A stretch of 63,225 nucleotides of DNA, the filler included, from Lenisia limosa (lineage: Eukaryota > Protista > Breviatea), in the NCBI GenBank assembly GCA_001655205.1. It is 13 parts of 13 records of this genome, joined end to end, with 100 filler letters (N's around TTAATTAATTAA, not from the genome) between each part and the next. Parts side by side here need not be neighbours in the genome. Positions count along the whole stretch, not along the records: positions 49,065 to 58,572 come from LPNZ01011296.1; 12 more parts are not named here. One strand, written 5' to 3'. Numbering within the stretch: position 1 is the stretch's first letter; each line of letters starts with the position of its first letter. Position numbers and translations under genes: made by a program. The notes below the pieces were generated by a model. That model did no database searches and was not told the DNA's origin. It was given only the letters and a program-made list of their open reading frames with translations. This document shows positions 47,621 to 58,805 of this stretch, piece by piece.

Positions 47621-49511
47621 TGAAGTCATCATTATTGGAGGAGAGTAAAAATGGACAACTTATGAAAAAAAAACCCCCCCAAATCAACTCTTTTGGCTGA
47701 CAACGGGGGTGGGGGTGGGGGGGAGTAAAACGAAGGAAATTTCAATGAAGATGGCGTAAAAGTACTAATCACGAACCGAATAATCTGAAACAAAAAACAA
47801 AAAAACAAGCAACAACAAACATGAACCAACGCTAAAACTTGACAAAAGCCAGATGACAAAAACACAAAAACAAAAACAAGCCCNNNNNNNNNNNNNNNNN
47901 NNNNNNNNNNNNNNNNNNNNNNNNNNNNNNNNNNNNNNNNNNNNNNNNNNNNNNNNNNNNNNNNNNNNNNNNNNNNNNNNNNNNNNNNNNNNNNNNNNNN
48001 NNNNNNNNNNNNNNNNNNNNNNAATGGGAGGGCATCAAGGGTTAATACGTAGGGCTCCGTGTAATTGGAAAATTAGAGACCTATTGTAATGGGATCTCCA
48101 TTTCAGAAACTTAAATTACAAATTATCAATTAATTGTTCGAAGAAATTAATTGCACGGAGTCAATAAGTATTGGGGTGGTGGGGGGATATACAATATAAG
48201 ATTGTATCTGGCCCGAAGCCGTCCACACCATCACTCTTCTTTGAGATATGATTATAGTATACAAATATTAATTCACCTTATCATTTGCCTAGCAACTCTG
48301 TGCACAGCTTTCAGTGTGCCTCCCCAGCTTGGGCGCGGAGGCATGGTAATGTGTTTATGTTAACTTTATGTATTCGTTTGTTGCCCTAGATTTCTAATGT
48401 ATTTCTCTGGTTCANNNNNNNNNNNNNNNNNNNNNNNNNNNNNNNNNNNNNNNNNNNNNNNNNNNNNNNNNNNNNNNNNNNNNNNNNNNNNNNNNNNNNN
48501 NNNNNNNNNNNNNNNNNNNNNNNNNNNNNNNNNNNNNNNNNNNNNNNNNNNNNNNNNNNNNNNNNNNNNNNNNNNNNNNNNTGCACAGAAACAAGTCGTA
48601 GGTTTCTGGGGGGGGAGGGGGGTAAAATCGGAAAATTTATGAAACAAAAAAATAGCTGAATCAAATTTGTTGGTTCACAACACACGAGGGTTGATAAAAA
48701 TAAAACAAAAGCCCAAGCTAATCGCTTCTGAAACAGCATCCCATCACTCCATCGTGGAGGAGGGGGGGATTGAAGAATTGATTCTGGGGGTTGTCGGTTT
48801 CTGGGGCGGAGAAAAACCCACTTCTCACAATCATAAACGAATCCCACACACCCCGTTTAAAGGTGCATTTTTAAAGGTGTAGGGCTTTACTTCAGTTCCA
48901 AAAAATACCGGCAAAATCTCGATAGCTTTCGAGGATTTATCAAGAAATTATGTCTTTTTTCGAANNNNNNNNNNNNNNNNNNNNNNNNNNNNNNNNNNNN
49001 NNNNNNNNTTAATTAATTAANNNNNNNNNNNNNNNNNNNNNNNNNNNNNNNNNNNNNNNNNNNNTCCAAATGTACTATACTGGGAATGAAAGGATGTGAT
49101 ATGGGTTTATATTTCTAAACATTGGAGTATGAAAAACATCTATCTTCATGACAATATTTTCAAATAATTCAAAGAGTCAATAAAGTTTCATAACAGACAG
49201 CTAATTCGTGAACATGCTTGATCGATAATCTGTCATGAATAGGGATCAAATGCCCCAGAGCATTGCCCCCCCCCCCCAACAAACCTCACGGCCGGNNNNN
49301 NNNNNNNNNNNNNNNNNNNNNNNNNNNNNNNNNNNNNNNNNNNNNNNNNNNNNNNNNNNNNNNNNNNNNNNNNNNNNNNNNNNNNNNNNNNNNNNNNNNN
49401 NNNNNNNNNNNNNNNNNNNNNNNNNNNNNNNNNNNNNNNNNNNNNNNNNNNNNNNNNNNNNNNNNNNNNNNNNNNNNNNNNNNNNNNNNNNNNNNNNNNN
49501 NNNNNNNNNNN

Positions 49512-50223
49512 GATATTCGCGAAATATGTTGCAAAAATGAAATATTAATATTGAAGAAGCTTGAGAGAAGTCCTGCTATTTCGACCAAATTGAAGCCATT
49601 CTGTTCTCCCCCAAGCGCCAACTTGTTAACAGGGGACTTCTTGTGGTAGATTCCAGACTTTGCGGGTGACCGACGTCTCACTGGGCTTCTGAAGGAGTGA
49701 GATGTAAGGCATTGGATGAGCTAAGTCACCCCATTATGTATGACCCTTCGTCTGGGTATCCCACAAAAATAACAACCAAAAATATTTATCCTAATGAAAT
49801 GAATCTGCACTAATCATGCTTATTATTGAGAGCTTTTGTCTAAAAAAACAGCCGGTTTTTCTTCAAAAGAAATCAAAGAATGCAGAGATGTGAGTTTGAT
49901 ATGCAATTGTTTTTTGTTTTTGATTTTTTACTTCTTTCTCATTAATAGAGAGCATACCTTTGTTTTCTCACTGGTGACCTTCCACGTCTGATTGGGGATC
50001 TGCTGCGTCTTCTTACGGGGGACCTTTTCATTGGTGATCGAGAGCGTCTTCTCATTGGGGAGCGGCGCTGGACAGGGCTTCTGGAGCGTTTGAAGGGCTT
50101 GGGGCTCAGGTCACGGCCAGCAAAAGGACTTCTGCGCCGAGGAGAGATAGAAGGACTCCGACGACGATTAGGGGAACCCTTCCTGATGGGAGATGGGGAC
50201 ATTGGCCGTGCATGGTAAACCAT
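49512..50223 (-). CDS. Arg/Ser/Pro-repeat (SR-related) protein, 3' partial
   Basis: MVYHARPMSPSPIRKGSPNRRRSPSISPRRRSP...RRRSRSPIRRGRSP; a second exon near 49690 has PVRRRSPAK. Confidence 0.7.
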
Positions 50224-50560
50224 TTTATCTAGTATCAATCAGTAACATGCGCTAGAGCTTGCCAGTCGCGCTAAATCTGCAAAACAAACCTGTTCTCTTA
50301 GCAAATGATGTTTCTCTTCTTCTACCCTGATTTATAGTTGATAAATTAAATAATAATAACTTTTCTGAACTTGTTGATTTTGTTATTGTGATTGAAAAAT
50401 TTGGATATTAATATCGATAAATATCTCGAAACTTATCGATATATTTTTGCTTCACAGTCATATCGGTGAATAAATACAGACAGATTTAGAGAGAGAAAGA
50501 GAGAGAGAGAAACAGAAAAACTGATAACGGATTGATTAATAGACAAACGAAAAGGAAGCA

Positions 50561-52688
50561 ATGTTGAATCCTGTTCAACTCTCTGTTGTACTTGCCTATG
50601 TTGGTCTACTAACCTTTGAATACGTTGCTATTCAGTTATCAAGGTCAAATGGTACTGAATTTGCCTATTCACCTGCAGCGGCTATTTTTGTTGTTGAGTC
50701 ACTAAAGCTTTTCATCTCCATCATCCTTTACAAGCGTGAAGAACAAACAAACCCCGAATTTGTTCCCTGTAAATTCAGCAAAGTGACATGGTACTTCGCA
50801 GTTCCAGCTATTCTCTATGCTCTGCAAAACAATGTCATGTTCTATGCCCTTCTGTACGTCCCTGCTCCCACTTACTCTGGTTGGCTAGGAGGGGGTAGAA
50901 AGGAAAAGTTTTTTTGTTGAAATTGCTCTTCACCTGCTATTCTTCTCCTGTGTCTCCCTTACAACATGTTAGATTCCCGTTGAACTCTTCTTGCCATAAC
51001 TGTTGCCTCATTATTATGGAAATCCATAATATGTACTGCTCTCAAACCCGTTCATGATATCCTGACATACCAGTATTCCTCAACCTCCGCGTTGTTATGA
51101 CAGCGCTTGTCTACTTGCTTGTTCTTGGTCGAGTGATTAAACCCAACCAGTATGCAACACTGCGCTTTGAATCCTTTCAAGTATAATTGCGCTTTCCATC
51201 TGTAGAATCGATCGTCCAATCAGTTCAGTTTTCTTTTTGTTTATGACTGTTTTTATCCTAATAGAGTTCACCCCCTCCTTTTTTTTTCCCACCCCGCAGA
51301 TGGACAGCAATTGGAGTGATCATGGTAAGTGTGGCGCTGACGCAGCTCACGCCGGAGTTCACTGTTGGCATCCCTTTCATCGGTCTCTGTCTTGTGATGG
51401 TTGTGGTAGGAGGGGCGGGGTAACAATCCTGAATTCCATTGTTTTGTTGAATATGTTTGTGTTTTACCATTTCCCAATTGTGAACGCCCATCATTCATTA
51501 TATTTCCCATAATAGTCATTTCCCCGTATCTTTGATCAGAATTCTCCCTCTACTTTCCCTAATGCATGCAGTGTACTTTGTCCGTTGGTAACGGTGTCTA
51601 TTCTGAGATGCTGCTGAAAACAGTTGACCAGGTGAGGTATATTCATGACGTTCCTCGATCAAAACCCTGAGTAATATTGTGAACTCCATGTAGTAATTCA
51701 GGAACCCTCACCCTTTAGTCCTTGCATTTCCAAAACATGCAGCTTTACATCTTCGGAATCATAGTCAACTTCATGCTCTTCTTTGTTGCGGTGAGGCTCG
51801 GACATAATAATAGGGGCTTAGTCACATTCACGATAGCTTGTAATATACAAACATATATGATGACAATTGCTTTCATTCGTAACTAGAAAAACGATAGCTA
51901 TTATTCTATACAATGTTTCAGAGATATTTATATTCCTCCCAAACACTTATGATCATGATATATTATGAAGCAAGGTTCCGGTTTTAACCACTCCAGGAAG
52001 GCTCGATTTTGAACATTTTTGAAGGTTTTACGCCGCTTGTCTGGGCTATCATCTTGTGCCAGGTATGTGACGATTTGCATATAAACAGATACTGCATATT
52101 CGACGACGTCGGAATTCTATCACAGTTCAAACTAATTTAACATCAAAGTCACACAATACATCTGATTAAAAGAGGGGTTGTGTATAATCCATTTCTTCAT
52201 CATTGGGAATTTTTTTTATTAATGTACAATCTTTTCTTTGTGTTTATTTCACTGATTGTTACTATATTCCTACACAATCTTGTTTTTTATTTCTCTTTGC
52301 TATCTAATCATATACCTCTGATAAACATGACGCTGTGGACGGCTTTTACTACCTTGCTTTATGTCTCTTTTCCATACAGTCATTTCAATAACCCCGCAGG
52401 CTTCAATGGGCATAGTCATTTCGGCAGTCATGCGGCTGACCGACAATATTGTAAAACTCTTCGCGTCAGCAGCGTCTTTGATCACCTCCGCCATTCTCGC
52501 CACTTTTCTCATTTCAGAGTGGGGTGGGATGAGAGTGACCGACCGTATAATTTTGATCCTCTTCCACTGCCTTTTTTTTTTTTTGAACGAATCAAATGTG
52601 TTCTCACGTTTTCAGTTTCCACATTTCAGGGCTCTTTTTCGTTGGGTGTGTTGGTATTGGAGCTGCCATCAGGTTGTACATTAAGTAG
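50561..52688 (+). CDS. SLC35A-family nucleotide-sugar transporter, complete
   Basis: AYSPAAAIFVVESLKL; FAVPAILYALQNNVMFYAL; MGIVISAVMRLTDNIVKLFASAASLITSAILA; ends GAAIRLYIK*. Confidence 0.9.
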
Positions 52689-53023
52689 CATTGTATTATT
52701 AGTCACCTGTTTCTTTTATGGTATTATGGAGTGTTTTTAATTTCACTTTGGTCCTCAAAGAAACGGATTAGAGCTGCTTTATAATATGACATAAGGTAAT
52801 GTTGAATTGATAGGATACAGAGAAATCTTTTCTATAAGAATCACCAATCTTTTTTCTTTTGCTCTTATGCTTTGCTCTTTTGAATGCACACCCAGTGGAT
52901 GCCTCATCAATATATCACGACTATGTAAATGTACATGTACAATCTGTACTCCTTCGAATATGAACCAGTCCCAATACTTCCCACCCGACTGTTGTTCTAC
53001 ATATTCGATACATTCCATCAACA

Positions 53024-56000
53024 CTACTCGAAGGAGTTCACCAGTATCTCTTCAAGCTGTATTGTTAGGGGAAAAAGAGCTTAAAAGTGATGATCAAAAA
53101 GAGGAAAATGTGAAAATTCGACTATAAAAAATGTTATCAAAACGAAGCCAAAAGGACCCACATGTTCTGAGAAGGCAGTGTGAGAAAAGAGGTCCTTCAC
53201 CCGCTGTCTGCCAGCCTCTCCCATCCTCCTGGCTGTTTCGGTGTTTTCAGTGAGCTTCAATATGGCTTCTGGGATGGGGTTAGAGGGAAATACCCCACCG
53301 AATTAACAAAGGCAAGGTGCATAAAAACATAGTTCAGACCAACTAAGAGCAAAGTGTTTGAGAGAGGGTTTTTTTTTCTTGTATTACTCACCATCCTTGA
53401 GTACCATTGTTCCTCTCCGAGATTATTTGCCTACCGCCAAAGTCCTGGCCGTCAGGGTTGCAGTGGAACCCGGTGACGTCATGCTGTACAGATTCCAAAG
53501 GTCCGCCTGACGCACAACACACAACAGGTGTGGAGAGGTACTGTTGGGTGAGTGAGTGGGAATGTTAGGTTTCATCAAATAACATGGTAAACGCAGAAAA
53601 AAAAATCACAAAAACACAATTCTCAAAAAAATGACAGTGTGTTGACAGTCCATGTACTTACCATTGCTTCACAAGGAACAATACCGAAGTGTTCGAAAGA
53701 GGGCGTGTAGACAAGGCAAATGGCGTGCTTTAACAGAGCATTTCCTAGAGAGGGTAAAGAACTAAAATGGAGAAAATCGTTCATATGATAATATGAAACC
53801 GGCTAGTATACAGTTTAAATCAGTTTACTTGATATCTGCATACTCATTTCAAAAGGTATTGATCGGAGGAACAGAATATCATCACTTAAACGTGACAGCT
53901 CAGCTTTCCCCTTCAATTCCTAAAGAAGGTCAATAATCTTGAAAAGAATACTTAGATATAGCTCTGAATCTAGGGAAAAGGGAAATAGAATAGATCGTGG
54001 TCAAAATTCTGAACCGCTTGATCAGGTCTTACTATATGCAAATGCTACATTTTACCATCCCAAAAAGGCCACGCAATGTACTCACCTCGTAATGGTCAAT
54101 GTTCTCCGTGTTGTTTGGATCATAACCACCTAAAAGTGAATATGACTAAGGAGGAACATCTTGATTGAATGAAGGCAGAGAACTAGGGCTTCACTTCGGT
54201 TCAAAAAAGACCGTTATTTTTCGAGGATATATCAGGAAATTCAGTCGTTTTTTGAACCGAAGTGAAGCCTAATAGAGAACGTTGCAAAATCACTTTTACT
54301 TTGAATGTAAGAGAACTTTGTGAGTAGGTTTCTTTCATTTTACTATTAACACAGTGCTGAGATGGTGGATTGAAAATGAACTGACTCACCAGCTATCACC
54401 AAAACAATGTCTGAAGAAGGCTTCTCTTTTTGAACCTGGATATGTGAGACTTAATCGTTCTAGTCCCAACTTCTCTGTTGAATCTTACATGATAGACATG
54501 TAGTACCGCCCACACCACGCCCAATGCATCAATAGTACCCCCCACACCACGCCCAATGCATCAATAGCAAGGTCAATGGATTTCTTTCGTTCGTAGCGGT
54601 TCAGAGACAAGATGAACTTCTTTCCCCTTGTGAAGTCAAACCAAATTCAATAAGTAAGAAAATCGAAATCTCAGAGCTTTTCGCTCTGGATGGATGGATT
54701 CCCTTTATTGTTGTTTTTATGTGTTTTATAACGCAAATATGAGATCAGAATAGGTGACTGGTACAAACTTTATGTTAAAAATAATAGAACTACAAGTTTT
54801 TAATTGAAATTTGGTGTGGGACACTATAACGAGAACTCTATTGTACATCCTTTGCTAACATATTTCATCAAAAATCAATGCAGAGATTACAAAAAAAAGC
54901 TACAGTTCCCCTCACTTCAACTCGGGTGGCAGAAGGCTGACACTTGTGTCACATGAATCAAGTGCATCAAGGTCAACACCAGGGTATACAACATGGGGGG
55001 TTGTCTGGAAATTAAGAGAAAATATAGGACCAGATGATTCCTTGCTGATTGAACACAGCAGACCTTCAGTGTTGTAAACGCCTTGGTAAACACCGAGGCA
55101 GTGAACTCACTATTGACCATGATCGCGTCAGCCTTGCCTGCGGAATTACTGGGTATACAGTTATGATTGTGAAGATAGGTGCATAAAGATCCAACCATGA
55201 AAAAAGTGATTTATCCGTAAAACACGATGATTGTAATAATTGAAAACAAATGAAATATCTTAGCTAATTCCACTGACGATCACTGTTGTCAAATATTAAT
55301 TCCATTTGAGCATATCCGATGATTTTTTACTGGTAGTAAGGTTGTGTACAACTGTTCGCAGTCCACTCATACCGGTTGCATATTCTTCAAGAGTGTCGAG
55401 GGGGTATCTAAACTAAATCAAAACTTGAGGAATCGTTGTTGCATAAATTCCAAACTAAACAGCCCGCATACCTGTAGATCTTTTTGGCAGTAGATTGGCG
55501 TGCAGTCAACAGCATATCCGGGTAGTGACAGTAGAACAGGATCTAAGAGGTAAACCAAAGCACTCGGTAATCTAACCTCTATAATCGACACCCACCTTAG
55601 CGGATCGCATTAATTTGAAGACAACTACGGCGGCGGCCACCTGATCACAGAACACCGCGTCAAACTCACTGAACAGACACTGGAGGGTGAGGGAACTCGG
55701 GTATTAGACAAGATTGTCTTCAAAAAAGACACAGGAAATCTTATACTGAGGAGAATAGGGCGCAAAACGCACACCCTCAAACCATAATGAAAGCCAAGTA
55801 AATCATTCGAATGTAGGCGCATAAGGCGTACATGAAACCAAAAATATTTTTTGGTAACCAATCACCATAAACCTCCACCTCGAGAGTGCCTGTGTGACTG
55901 GTCAGAAATAGCAGTAATTTCCAGACAGCTATTCTTTATTGTGGGTATAGTGGTCGTGGAATATAAGGGTGGTAAACAACACATCATATAATTAATTAAA

Positions 56001-56483
56001 AAAAAAAAAGTTAAACATCACATACAATGAGTATTGGAAGTCGGATGACGACAAGACACCCACCATCAACAGTTTCCTCGAAACAATGACCTCGGTCGTG
56101 ATGTGCGGTGTACATAGTCACCTGGTGGCCCTGGCTTTTCAGAGCCACAGCCGCATCTATGACAAGGCGCTCTGCCCCGCCTGTGGGGATGAATTAGAAG
56201 AACTACATTTCTTGTCATCTCATAAAGCAGTTTCATTAGACACAACATACACAATAAAAAAGAATGAAGAGGGAGTTGGTGATATTTCAGGTTGCGTCAT
56301 AAATTCTAAATTCAAAACAATCATATTTAAAACTGTATGAATCGCCCGTATAGGGATTTAAATAAAGCCATACTGCCCGGACAAGGAAATGGGATAAATG
56401 AATTGGCAGAAAAGGCGGATAAAAAACTATTGCCCGTTTCCCTTACCTATTCCTAAGTCTGGATGAATGAATGCCACTTTCAT
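53024..56483 (-). CDS. ALG2: Alpha-1,3/1,6-mannosyltransferase ALG2, complete
   Basis: [13 protein letters not shown]|[13 protein letters not shown]; [13 protein letters not shown]; [11 protein letters not shown]; [15 protein letters not shown]; [16 protein letters not shown]; SGGPLESV. Confidence 0.96.
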
Positions 56484-56617
56484 GGTGGGAAAGTAACAGG
56501 AGAAGGAGAACCCTGCCCTTCCAGCAAAATATATATCCTGCGGTGATTATATGACTTCCTTTTTGCGATTTTTTGCAGCTCTCAGGCCCTCTAATCATAT
56601 AGTTGTTGTTGGCAAAT

Positions 56618-58559
56618 ATGATTACCTTCTTTTTGAATGGAAGACAGGTACTGCAGCTTTCGAGGTGTTTCCTCACTAAATTTCTAGGTCGATGTCGCTC
56701 ACCCCGAGCCATCCATGTCTCTGTTGACTTACATCCGTGAGGTTGCCTACCTTACCGGAACTAAGGATGCGTGCCAGCAAGCTCGGACTGGAACTGACAC
56801 CGTTCTTATGTCTTTCTGGGACGCTGAAAAGAAGGCTGAGAAGTATGAGGGATTAGAGAAGATGTGTTCTCGAAAAATCATTTTCGTGAATGGAAAATGG
56901 AGATTTAATGACGAATTACAGGCATATCTCCATCAATGCTGGTATTCTTCCCCTTGTTGCCGCTGATGGCGTTGCTATCACCACCATTGAGGCTCTTGGC
57001 AACCCTCGCGACGGACTTCATGCCATCCAGGTGAGCAAACACGCCCCAACCTCCCTTGATCTAACCTTATTATAGGAGTCTTTCAAGAAGAACCATGCTA
57101 CTCAGTGCGGTTTCGGTGAGATCTTGTTTTTCAGGGAGGCGTTCTCACATGCTCCTCTGGGGTCATTCTACACTATATTTAATATTGGGAATAGTTATGA
57201 TAAGCCATTTTTCCTCCGAAACTCCTCTTCACATACCATGGAAGAAATATAGAGATCCTCTTCGCAGTGACTGATATCGTACATTGTATTTGCCGTTCTT
57301 CTTCTCTTTAATTGATGGCAAAATAACATACGTTGAAGAGCAGGACTGGTTCGTTTACAGGCTACTATAATGGGTATTGTAACATACCATAATCAAATAT
57401 ATCTTGATAGTGTACTATCCTGTAAATATCATCGATATTGATGGGTACTATCCTGTAAATATCGTTCGGCCAGATACTCTATTGCTTGTTTTTTTTTTTT
57501 TTTNNNNNNNNNNNNNNNNNNNNNNNNNNNNNNNNNNNNNNNNNNNNNNNNNNNNNNNNNNNNNNNNNNNNNNNNNNNNNNNNNTCTCTCCTCAAGAAGC
57601 ACCCTCAGCCCACCGACCTCCAGATCCAGGTCTGCCCCCCTCCAAGACTGGAGTCAATAAGATGAGGGAATAGTGTTATTTCAAGACAACATCACTGATA
57701 GCTTGGTTGATAGTCCTTGTTCACAATATCATGCTGAAACGCGATGGTATGAAGAGCTTTGCTCTGAATCAACCTTCTTCAACAAATATCATTTTCCAGC
57801 TCGGGAAAGGGAGGGCGGATTCTTCGGGTTTTATGTATTACCGGATAGGATCCATCATGCTGAATTTCCGTCTCACCGCCCAGGAATGCTTTGACGGTAA
57901 CCTTGACCGTTGCTGTGGATACCGCCCCATTTTCAAGGCTGCGCGTGACGTCGCCGCCAACCCCGAGGCTATGATCACCACTTCCAAGGTGGGGATGATT
58001 GGAATGTCATGACAATGGGGTATTTTTATGTGTTGAAGGGAATTGACATGCTGAAGTTGACCCCCCTTCTTCTTAACGCTTAAGGCTCTTCTGTTCCCCC
58101 TTCTTCTTAACGCTGAAGGCTCTTCTGTTCCCCCTTCTTCTTAACGCTTAAGGCTCTTCTGTTCCCCGAGGCACTCAAGTCCTATGAAATCAAGGATCTC
58201 ANNNNNNNNNNNNNNNNNNNNNNNNNNNNNNNNNNNNNNNNNNNNNNNNNNNNNNNNNNNNNNNNNNNNNNNNNNNNNNNNNNNNNNNNNNNNNNNNNNN
58301 NNNNNNNNNNNNNNNNNNNNNNNNNNNNNNNNNNTGTTCTACCGCCCCACTTCTGTCGAAGGCGTCAAGAAGGCTCTCGTATGGGGGGCACATAGCAACC
58401 GGAGTTAAGTTGCGTTATTCATTACACTAGCCTTAATACCCGACTTTGGCGTCTCCTTTTACCCTATTCACCCCCAGGTTGAGTCTCCCTCCGCTCTCAT
58501 CATGGCCGGTAACACCGCCTCAGGTGTCGACAAATTCCGTGAAGGTTGCATCCCTGACG
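56618..58559 (+). CDS. Xanthine dehydrogenase/aldehyde oxidase-family protein with degenerate Fe-S motifs, 3' truncated
   Basis: MITFFLNGRQ|VDVAHPEPSMSLLTYIR...GTK; AITTIEALG; HATQCGF; FDGNLDRCCGYRPIF; FAD-domain start FYRPTSVE...LIMAGNTASG. Confidence 0.9.
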
Positions 58560-58805
58560 TGGGGGGGGGGGGNNNNNNNNNNNNNNNNNNNNNNNNNNNN
58601 NNNNNNNNNNNNNNNNTTAATTAATTAANNNNNNNNNNNNNNNNNNNNNNNNNNNNNNNNNNNNNNNNNNNNCAGACACACACAGACAGACAAACACACA
58701 CAGACAGACACACATACACACACACACACACATTACACACACACAGACAGACACACACACACACAGACAGACACACACATTATACCTCCCCCACTATTCC
58801 ACCCG

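What the first reader, a model, noticed from the sequence alone, without database searches (positions are those of the whole stretch)
56715..57925. XDH/AOX-like protein has lost 5 of 8 canonical [2Fe-2S] cysteines, two replaced by Asp
Seen, in gap-free alignment to mammalian XDH: GTKLGCGEGGCGACTVMLS becomes GTKDACQQARTGTDTVLMS (C43 kept, C48->T, C51->D); NACL becomes NAGI (C73->G); QCGFC becomes QCGF plus a split codon starting with G (C116 cannot be Cys); GNLCRCTGY becomes GNLDRCCGY (C148->D, C150 kept, extra Cys). The frame and surrounding fold residues are intact. Known: both clusters relay electrons from Moco to FAD, and Asp can ligate Fe-S clusters in some proteins. Inference: an Fe-S-less pseudoenzyme or flavoprotein, or altered non-Cys cluster ligation.
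Basis: partly seen in the sequence, partly recalled or inferred. Interest (0 to 1): 0.72.

Follow-up and report, generated by a model that had tools for sequence, protein, structure and literature searches.

The report
Xanthine dehydrogenase without its electron wire
An unidentified intron-rich eukaryote has an intact, transcribed xanthine dehydrogenase gene that keeps its molybdenum active site but has lost the residues that hold both iron-sulfur clusters and two universal FAD-site residues; I found no such enzyme described.

Summary
Spliced poly-A RNA contigs and an identical 34-kb public metagenome contig fill both N gaps. They show the predicted splicing and an intact frame.

- **Fe-S ligands:** the C116 codon is GAA (Glu). 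Only 3 of 8 ligands remain: C43, C113 and C150. The others are T48, D51, G73, E116 and D148, and there is an extra Cys at 151.
- **Gene integrity:** the contig carries almost the whole gene. My model has about 38 exons, GT..AG introns, about 1,260 codons, no stop and no frameshift, with a strong coding signal.
- **Targeted loss:** the N-terminal 168 residues align to XDH without a gap. They keep 22 of 25 non-ligand positions that are invariant in animals, against 3 of 8 ligands (p=0.01).
- **FAD site:** D360 is now S and K422 is now E. Both are conserved in animal XDH and in bacterial XdhA.
- **Molybdenum site:** it is fully XDH-type (Q767, E802, R880, R912, F914, F1009, T1010, E1261).
- **Relatives:** no relative with the same substitutions turned up in any search.

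Verdict: a real gene under constraint, not a pseudogene, whose internal Mo-to-FeS-to-FAD relay is broken. How it turns over is inferred only. The organism is unidentified and no orthologue was found.

The parts
56618..56647 (+). Exon 1: start codon and MITFFLNGRQ. An in-frame stop lies 5 codons upstream.
   Evidence: Read directly. It places without a gap on XDH consensus columns 8-17. The GT donor is at 56648.
56688..56842 (+). Exon 2: ferredoxin-type domain holding the degenerate cluster II loop GTKDACQQARTGTDTV (C43 kept, C48T, C51D).
   Evidence: RNA contig record 9 covers 56688-56843 with no differences. It aligns without a gap to bovine XDH 20-60. The ESM features search places it nearest Fer2 clusters.
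56922..57030 (+). Exon 3: NAGI (C73G) and the conserved TTIEALG stretch.
   Evidence: It aligns without a gap to bovine XDH 67-102. The exon 3 to exon 4 joint is seen as a 12-letter loose end of RNA record 10.
57076..57115 (+). Exon 4: ESFKKNHATQCGF plus the first base of the split codon. C113 is kept (TGC at 57106-08).
   Evidence: RNA record 10 covers 57074-57115 and continues into exon 5.
57116..57584 (+). Intron 4 (468 nt in the ungapped contig) and the first 29 nt of exon 5. The N run 57504-57584 hides 109 nt: 80 nt of intron ending CCCCAG, then the exon start.
   Evidence: 29 letters join the two sides in the RNA contig. The same letters are in the X1 DNA contig and in L122/L123. The codon is G|AA, so E116.
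57585..57629 (+). The visible part of exon 5: SLLKKHPQPTDLQIQ.
   Evidence: RNA record 10 covers it. The joint 57629 to 57884 is GT..AG.
57884..57988 (+). Exon 6: cluster I motif GNLDRCCGYRPI (C148D, C150 kept, T151C). The 3' end is not verified by RNA. An alternative donor lies 17 nt further on.
   Evidence: RNA record 10 reaches 57928 with no differences. It aligns without a gap to bovine 142-166. Pfam Fer2_2 is a weak hit.
58062..58167 (+). A 34-nt tandem repeat (3.1 copies) that multiplies a candidate acceptor just before the next exon.
   Evidence: Tandem Repeats Finder. The exon 6 to exon 7 junction is unresolved.
58153..58201 (+). Exon 7a: (A)LLFPEALKSYEIKDL. The start is uncertain. It runs 12 nt into gap 2.
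   Evidence: RNA record 11 runs from 58164. The ungapped sequence was read.
58202..58334 (.). Assembly gap 2. It hides 75 nt: 12 nt of exon, a 54-nt GT..AG intron with a G14 run, and 9 nt of exon.
   Evidence: The DNA contig has 75 letters here and the RNA has 21. L122 17670-17744 fills it.
58335..58378 (+). Exon 7b: (KRV)FYRPTSVEGVKKAL, the start of the FAD domain.
   Evidence: RNA record 11 covers it. The joint 58378 to 58478 is GT..AG.
58478..58558 (+). Exon 8: VESPSALIMAGNTASGVDKFREGCIPD, holding the FAD GNT..G loop. The donor GTGGGG at 58559 starts the poly-G run at which the assembly broke.
   Evidence: RNA record 11 leaves the window at 58559 and continues with the next exon. That exon is found 122 nt downstream in L123.

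Best explanation
This is the 5' quarter of a real nuclear gene for a full-length XDH-type molybdoenzyme. It is spliced and polyadenylated. All seven domains are present in the usual order.

**Shown:**
- The molybdenum active site and purine pocket are intact.
- Cluster II has lost 3 of 4 ligands and its loop is remodelled. Cluster I has lost 2 of 4.
- Two universally conserved FAD-site residues are replaced.
- The fold-determining residues around all of these sites are kept.

**Inferred:**
- The protein folds like XDH and binds Moco, but it cannot pass electrons from Mo through Fe/S I and Fe/S II to FAD. It is therefore neither a classical dehydrogenase nor a classical oxidase.
- The most likely mode of action is a Moco-only hydroxylase in which both half-reactions occur at the molybdenum site. 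Xanthine or hypoxanthine would reduce Mo(VI). A small oxidant that reaches the Mo centre, such as nitrite or O2, would re-oxidise it.
- The dead Fe-S and FAD domains are kept as scaffold for the Moco domain and the dimer.
For: **Expression and splicing.** Four GT..AG or gap-spanning joints, plus two joints seen as loose ends, appear in poly-A RNA contigs. There are no base differences over the exons.

**Gene integrity.** ENA contig NODE_236 is identical to the piece. A spliced alignment to a profile of 107 XDHs gives 37 exons and 36 GT..AG introns, with no frameshift and no stop, over profile columns 1-1266 of 1330. Adding the RNA-verified 54-nt intron gives about 38 exons. GC at codon positions 1/2/3 is .60/.43/.68 against .40 in introns. 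There are 0 stops in frame against 22 and 59 in the other two frames.

**Targeted loss of ligands.**
- The Fe-S region places without a gap on the consensus.
- Non-ligand invariant positions kept: 22/25. Ligands kept: 3/8 (p=0.0099). At the 98% threshold: 32/40 against 3/8 (p=0.025).
- All eight lost non-ligand positions are conservative changes.
- Canonical controls keep 8/8 Cys with similar or lower non-ligand retention: bacterial XdhA mean 28/40, three fragment sequences (P0003-P0005) 31-36/40.
- The five replaced Cys codons (ACT, GAC, GGT, GAA, GAC) need at least 10 base changes from TGY. The loss is therefore old, or it was driven by selection.

**FAD site.** D360S, K422E, F337T, G349A and N351S. 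D360 and K422 are kept in 100% of animal XDHs and in 96/96 and 95/96 bacterial XdhA.

**Moco site.** Q767, F798, E802, R880, R912, F914, F1009, T1010, A1079 and E1261 are all kept. R880 is confirmed against bovine 1FO4 numbering. The Moco domain keeps 94/104 near-invariant columns. Single exons pass the Pfam thresholds for MoCoBD_1 and MoCoBD_2.
Against: - There is no biochemical evidence of any kind.
- No orthologue was found, so neither dN/dS nor the age of the change could be measured.
- Only the first eight exons have RNA support.
- Several FAD-domain exons and the exon 6/7 junction are modelled with low confidence.
- E802 depends on choosing one of two possible splice pairs.
- The last ~60 codons are cut off by the end of the contig.
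- As far as I know, direct re-oxidation of the XO-type Mo centre by O2 is slow in known enzymes.
- A canonical XDH paralogue may exist elsewhere in the genome, which would leave this copy free to drift.
- The FAD-contact roles of D360 and K422 are recalled from annotation, not tested here. Only their conservation was measured.
- The RNA and DNA come from one study.
Confidence: 0.6

Rival explanations
1. Cluster I survives in a non-canonical form. It would be ligated by C113, C150 and the new C151 plus Asp148 or Glu116, and would hand electrons from Moco to an external partner. Only cluster II and FAD would be lost.
For: In the two cluster I motifs every non-ligand residue is kept (QCGF-TPG and GNL-RC-GYRPI). 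A new Cys appears right beside C150, and both replacements are carboxylates. The cluster II loop, in contrast, is remodelled throughout. From general knowledge, 3-Cys-plus-Asp [2Fe-2S] and [4Fe-4S] sites exist, for example in E. coli SdhB and Pyrococcus ferredoxin.
Against: These motifs also pack against the pterin, and that alone could explain why they are conserved. Two adjacent Cys rarely bind the same cluster. Cluster I is buried, and without cluster II it has no known exit route.
Confidence: 0.15
2. The protein is not a redox catalyst. It would be an XDH-derived binding, storage or scaffold protein, for example for purines or for Moco, that needs an intact Mo pocket but no turnover.
For: All three electron-transfer sites are degenerate while the folds are kept. 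The RNA contig depths are low, although depths from contigs cannot be ranked.
Against: The catalytic base E1261 is kept, along with the whole set of transition-state and substrate residues: E802, R880, Q767 and the Phe pair. Simple binding would not require all of these.
Confidence: 0.15
3. The gene is decaying, either as a redundant paralogue or after the pathway was lost. It would still be transcribed and simply not yet have acquired a stop codon.
For: Essential ligands are gone. The Fe-S domain is 43% identical to the animal consensus, slightly below the mean for canonical bacterial XdhA (44%), although the Moco domain is closer to animals than bacterial XdhB is (53% against 47%). One FAD exon finds no PDB relative. 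There is a repeat-bearing 468-nt intron, and a tandem repeat stands at an acceptor site.
Against: About 1,260 codons are open and all 36 modelled introns have GT..AG ends. Codon-position GC is strongly coding. 90% of the Moco near-invariant positions and 80-88% of the Fe-S non-ligand invariant positions are kept, while the five lost Cys codons have changed at 10 or more bases. Uniform neutral decay cannot give that contrast.
Confidence: 0.1

Closest known systems
Canonical eukaryotic xanthine dehydrogenase/oxidase (bovine XDH, PDB 1FO4/1FIQ; animal XDHs such as XP_061195293.1)
   Same: The seven-domain order is the same. The Fe-S region aligns without a gap. The Moco site is XDH-type with E802 and R880. 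53% of the Moco domain is identical to the animal consensus.
   Different: Five of the 8 Fe-S ligands are replaced (T, D, G, E, D), and the FAD-site residues D360 and K422 are replaced. Of the 120 animal family members retrieved, 116 keep all 8 Cys and the other four are truncated gene models. All nine of the nearest relatives of exon 2 keep the three cluster II Cys that exon 2 covers.
Desulfovibrio gigas aldehyde oxidoreductase (MOP) and other FAD-less XO-family enzymes (from general knowledge)
   Same: These are XO-family Mo enzymes that work without a functional FAD site.
   Different: They keep both [2Fe-2S] clusters and simply lack the FAD domain. Here the FAD and Fe-S domains are present, but their cofactor residues are gone.
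Plant sulfite oxidase (from general knowledge)
   Same: It is a eukaryotic molybdoenzyme that lost its internal electron-transfer partner and is re-oxidised directly at the Mo centre. This is an analogy for the proposed mechanism.
   Different: It belongs to a different Moco family (the sulfite oxidase fold). The heme domain was deleted there, not retained in a dead form.
Asp-ligated iron-sulfur sites such as the [2Fe-2S] of E. coli succinate dehydrogenase SdhB (from general knowledge)
   Same: A carboxylate stands at a canonical Cys ligand position of a ferredoxin-type motif.
   Different: Those sites keep three Cys. Here cluster II keeps one, and cluster I keeps two plus an adjacent new one.

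Membership tests
Xanthine oxidase family, eukaryotic XDH/AOX architecture | Domain order Fer2, Fer2_2, FAD_binding_5, CO_deh_flav_C, Ald_Xan_dh_C, MoCoBD_1, MoCoBD_2 in one chain | tested here: met
   The spliced profile alignment is collinear over columns 1-1266. Pfam scores for single exons: FAD_binding_5 33.5 bits, MoCoBD_1 55.1, MoCoBD_2 45.4, Ald_Xan_dh_C 30.5, CO_deh_flav_C weak, Fer2_2 weak. The Fer2 domain is seen only through PDB alignments and ESM features.
Xanthine oxidase family, eukaryotic XDH/AOX architecture | Eight Cys ligands of the two [2Fe-2S] clusters (43, 48, 51, 73; 113, 116, 148, 150) | tested here: not met
   The residues are C, T, D, G; C, E, D, C.
Xanthine oxidase family, eukaryotic XDH/AOX architecture | FAD-site residues: the GNT..G loop, D360 and K422 | tested here: not met
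   The loop is kept. D360 is now S and K422 is now E. Both are conserved in 107/107 animal XDHs and in 96/96 and 95/96 bacterial XdhA. Their role as FAD contacts is recalled, not tested here.
Xanthine oxidase family, eukaryotic XDH/AOX architecture | Moco-binding and catalytic residues (Q767, F798, R912, A1079, E1261) | tested here: met
   All are kept. The Moco domain keeps 94/104 near-invariant columns.
XDH subtype (purine hydroxylase) as opposed to aldehyde oxidase | E802 and R880 in the substrate pocket, with F914, F1009 and T1010 | tested here: met
   R880 is confirmed by the gap-free alignment to 1FO4 residues 827-889. E802 depends on choosing the better-supported of two possible splice pairs.
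Xanthine oxidase family | Actual content of Mo, Fe and flavin, and activity | not testable with these tools
   This needs purified protein.
Processed or unitary pseudogene | Stops, frameshifts, lost splice sites, or no spliced transcript | tested here: not met
   No stop or frameshift in about 1,260 codons. All 36 modelled introns, plus the RNA-verified 54-nt intron in gap 2, have GT..AG ends. Spliced poly-A RNA contigs are present.
Non-Cys-ligated [2Fe-2S] site (3 Cys plus 1 Asp/His type) | At least three Cys plus one alternative ligand in the positions of the motif | tested here: inconclusive
   Cluster I has C113, C150 and the new C151 plus D148/E116, which is possible on paper. Cluster II has C43 only, with Gly at position 73, so it does not meet the feature. 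No structure model was made.

The most novel reading that the evidence does not exclude
This would be the first XO-family enzyme that turns over with molybdenum cofactor alone. It would be a xanthine hydroxylase whose Mo(IV) is re-oxidised at the Mo site by a small oxidant, for example as a xanthine:nitrite oxidoreductase that makes NO. The alternative is that it carries a [2Fe-2S] cluster with carboxylate ligands on one iron. Either way it would have evolved by dismantling the Fe-S/FAD relay while keeping the domains as scaffold, possibly to save iron.
Probability: 0.3. Interest if true: 0.85.

Novelty: new variant of a known kind. Interest (0 to 1): 0.7.

Why it matters
In every XO-family enzyme I could retrieve, the two [2Fe-2S] clusters are fixed features. 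That covers 116 full-length animal proteins, 111 of 118 bacterial XdhA, and the nearest relatives of exon 2. Textbook mechanisms route every electron through these clusters.

This protein keeps a complete XDH-type Mo site and has lost that route. It would show one of three things:
- the Mo centre can be recycled in another way;
- the Fe-S and FAD domains have a structural role that can be separated from electron transfer;
- carboxylates can replace Cys in this type of cluster.

It also gives a natural 'wire-cut' variant for studying the reductive half-reaction, nitrite reduction and Moco insertion on their own. If the organism lives under iron limitation, it may be an example of iron sparing.

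Tried and rejected
**Searches for relatives that found nothing with the same substitutions**
- The word search with exon 2 and with Moco exon 26 gave no candidates. The length window allows only fragment-sized proteins.
- The exhaustive phmmer search with exon 2 gave nine hits, all with canonical Cys. The best are 52% and 50% identical. They come from a 648-nt NCBI contig and from an ENA metagenome contig that looks like a GC-rich eukaryote.
- The back-translated pattern GNLDRCxGYRP gave 0 hits in JGI metagenomes and 0 in prokaryote genomes.
- The search for related loci with exon 2 in metagenomes confirmed nothing.
- Seven literature searches found no XO-family member with substituted ligands.

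**Other steps that led nowhere**
The look-up of the neighbouring transporter ORF succeeded and gave the full contig.
- PDB searches with exons of 23-24 aa and with FAD exon 12 gave no hits.
- The organism could not be identified. There are no Rfam or tRNA hits on the 34-kb contig, the neighbouring genes are not diagnostic, and the ESM taxa were uninformative.

**Modelling notes**
- A first spliced alignment guided by a single oyster XDH mis-modelled the FAD region. It was replaced by a profile-guided one.
- The gapped DP alignment artificially matched CC to C-x-C, so I used ungapped placement instead.

**Explanations rejected**
- Assembly artefact: the RNA agrees with the DNA.
- RNA editing or alternative splicing that restores Cys: the RNA contigs carry the non-Cys codons.
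- Variant genetic code: the same codons encode conserved T, D, G and E elsewhere in the gene.

- Inside local scripts, joined exons were used only to count stops and codon-position GC. Nothing joined was printed or searched.
Full report
**What is in the window.** The piece 49065-58572 is eukaryotic nuclear DNA with short GT..AG introns. It holds three genes:
- a nucleotide-sugar transporter gene on the + strand;
- an ALG2-like GT4/GT1 glycosyltransferase gene on the - strand;
- head-to-head with the second, the 5' part of an XDH-family gene that starts at ATG 56618.

That fixes the ligand positions as C43, T48, D51, G73, C113, D148 and C150, with an extra C151.

**The gaps, splicing and expression.** One DNA run (X1) holds the stretch completely. 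A poly-A metatranscriptome run of the same study (X2) holds the exons. When laid on 56400-58572, the RNA contigs show the following:
- exon 2 intact;
- exon 3 joined to exon 4;
- exon 4 joined across the first N gap to 57585 through 29 letters;
- 57629 joined to 57884 (GT..AG);
- 58201 joined across the second gap to 58335 through 21 letters;
- 58378 joined to 58478 (GT..AG);
- the last exon leaving the window at 58559.

There are no base differences over the exons. The 29 letters make the split codon G|AA, so position 116 is Glu, followed by TPGMEMSLY in frame. The transcript is therefore spliced as predicted. It carries the non-Cys codons at positions 48, 51, 116 and 148. The codon for position 73 is not covered by RNA.

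**Getting the rest of the gene.** An exact look-up of the neighbouring transporter ORF found ENA metagenome contig ERZ3820729 NODE_236, 34,228 nt long. It is 100% identical to all four N-free blocks of the piece.
- Gap 1 hides 109 nt: 80 nt of intron and 29 nt of exon.
- Gap 2 hides 75 nt: 12 nt of exon, a 54-nt intron and 9 nt of exon.
- The terminal poly-G run is real sequence at an intron donor.

Two further look-ups gave the whole contig as loci L122-L124. The gene runs on the minus strand of L123 from 9556 almost to the end of the contig.

**Gene model.** I wrote a spliced aligner with codon matches, GT..AG introns in all three phases, and penalised frameshifts. I ran it first with one oyster XDH as guide. 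I then ran it with a profile of 107 full-length animal XDHs retrieved by the word search.
- The profile run gives 37 exons and 36 introns of 40-468 nt, all GT..AG. It has no frameshift and no stop, and covers profile columns 1-1266 of 1330.
- It read through the RNA-verified 54-nt in-frame intron, so the true count is about 38 exons.
- The end of the contig cuts off the last ~60 codons.
- The RNA-verified introns were recovered, except at the exon 6/7 junction, which lies in the poorly conserved linker next to a 34-nt tandem repeat.
- The coding signal is strong. GC at codon positions 1/2/3 is .60/.43/.68 against .40 in introns. There are 0 stops in frame against 22 and 59 in the other two frames.
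- Pfam, run exon by exon, finds FAD_binding_5, Ald_Xan_dh_C, MoCoBD_1 and MoCoBD_2, most of them above or near threshold.

**Is the Cys loss specific?** Each Fe-S exon places on the XDH consensus without a gap, and the placements are contiguous over columns 8-168.

| Columns compared | Non-ligand kept | Ligand Cys kept | Fisher p |
|---|---|---|---|
| Invariant in all 107 animal XDHs | 22 of 25 | 3 of 8 | 0.0099 |
| At least 98% conserved | 32 of 40 | 3 of 8 | 0.025 |

- The eight non-ligand losses are all conservative: G/A, M/L, L/I, C/V, V/I, G/A, G/A and T/C.
- Among canonical bacterial XdhA sequences taken from the control pattern search, 111 of 118 keep 8/8 Cys. The other seven look like partial alignments. 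On average they keep 28 of the 40 non-ligand positions.
- Three partial sequences from the exon 2 search (P0003-P0005) keep 31-36 of 40 and all eight Cys.
- All 116 full-length animal family members keep 8/8 Cys.

The fold is therefore conserved as well as in working enzymes, and the ligands alone are gone. The replaced codons (ACT, GAC, GGT, GAA, GAC) need at least 10 base changes from TGY. The cluster II loop has also lost its glycines (GCGEGGCGAC has become ACQQARTGTD). Both point to an old or a selected change, not a recent accident.

In the cluster I motifs, by contrast, every non-ligand residue is kept. A new Cys sits beside C150 there.

**The other cofactor sites.** Numbering was transferred through a seal XDH, P0099. 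It carries the eight Cys at the human and bovine positions and runs one residue ahead of bovine from about residue 260 onward. I checked this offset on bovine 1FO4, where exon 26 aligns without a gap to residues 827-889.

The Moco and substrate residues are all kept. In bovine numbering they are Q767, F798, E802, R880, R912, F914, F1009, T1010, A1079 and E1261. E802 plus R880 is the signature of XDH as opposed to aldehyde oxidase. This signature, like the residue roles in this section, is from my own knowledge. The Moco domain keeps 94 of 104 near-invariant columns. E802 rests on one of two possible splice pairs. The chosen pair has the much better acceptor.

In the FAD domain the GNT..G loop is kept. 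The following residues are changed:
- D360 is now Ser. A gap-free alignment to mouse AOX3 confirms it.
- K422 is now Glu.
- F337 is now T, G349 is now A and N351 is now S.

D360 and K422 are invariant in the 107 animal XDHs. They are kept in 96/96 and 95/96 bacterial XdhA. Overall, FAD-domain conservation is no worse than in bacterial enzymes.

**Relatives.**
- The exhaustive phmmer search with exon 2 against 1.84 billion representatives gave nine hits at E of 0.001 or better. All are canonical at the cluster II loop, and the best is 52% identical.
- The derived motif GNLDRCxGYRP has no exact match in the JGI metagenome contigs or in one genome each of 185,579 prokaryote species.
- The word searches and the metagenome protein scan found nothing.
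- No paper retrieved describes an XO-family member with substituted ligands.

Absence here is limited by the exon-sized queries and by what has been sequenced. The organism itself remains unidentified.

**Interpretation.** It is shown that the gene is real, expressed, spliced, nearly full-length and constrained. Its Mo site is XDH-type, while cluster II, half of cluster I and two universal FAD-site residues are lost.

It is inferred that the Mo-to-Fe/S I-to-Fe/S II-to-FAD relay cannot work. Any catalysis must therefore recycle molybdenum at the Mo site itself. XOR is known to reduce nitrite to NO there, which I cite from general knowledge. The silent domains would then serve as scaffold.

Three rivals remain: a non-canonical cluster I, a non-catalytic binding role, and early decay. 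Uniform decay fits the data poorly.

**Limits.**
- Joined exons were used only inside local scripts, to count stops and codon-position GC.
- RNA support covers exons 1-8 only.
- The RNA and DNA come from one study.
- One difference between RNA and genome (GAA against GAG, which would be synonymous) sits at the very tip of an RNA contig and may be an error.

Noticed in passing
window 53084-56484 (- strand): An ALG2-like GT4/GT1 glycosyltransferase gene with many introns. Its 5' exon (about 56446-56484) lies only ~130 nt from the XDH-like ATG, so the two genes diverge from one short promoter region. A 1,210-nt RNA contig covers this exon.
   Followed up: partly
window 50543-~52700 (+ strand): A nucleotide-sugar transporter gene (Pfam Nuc_sug_transp on the first long exon). 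Its ORF was the key to finding the identical ENA contig.
   Followed up: partly
window 49945-50238 (- strand); L124 16476-16832 (-): An Arg/Ser-rich ORF (RRRSPS repeats) lies about 1.2 kb from an exon that reads like an RRM (recognised by eye; Pfam found no family in the RS-rich ORF and the RRM-like exon was not scanned). Together they look like an SR-type splicing factor gene.
   Followed up: no
window 57489-57503, 58560-58572; L123 ~7925 (inside gap 2): Both assembly gaps in this stretch and the end of the piece coincide with homopolymer runs (T15, G14, G13) inside introns. G-rich donors (GTGGGG, GTGGGC, GTGGGT) make up 9 of the 36 modelled donors in this gene.
   Followed up: partly
window 58062-58167: A 34-nt tandem repeat (3.1 copies, 97% matches) that triplicates a candidate 3' splice site just upstream of exon 7. 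Which copy is used is unknown.
   Followed up: partly
window 57400-57470: A direct repeat of about 20 nt (GGGTACTATCCTGTAAATATC) inside intron 4. At 468 nt this intron is unusually long and AT-rich, so it may hold a small insertion.
   Followed up: no
L123 ~7494 (g 2207), next exon after the window: The RNA contig reads GAA where the genome reads GAG. The change would be synonymous. It sits two letters from the contig tip, so it is either an allele or an error.
   Followed up: no
L001 (ENA GROS21-1 metagenome contig, 551 nt): This is the second-nearest relative of exon 2 (50% identity; P0001 is 52%) and has canonical Cys. It sits in a GC-rich eukaryotic contig with its own introns. There the FFLNG and P-x-P parts are in one exon, so intron 1 of the window gene is not shared.
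   Followed up: partly
L124 1561-2938 (+ strand): Exons that read like an amino-acid transporter (recognised by eye, not scanned with Pfam) lie on the far end of the same 34-kb contig.
   Followed up: no
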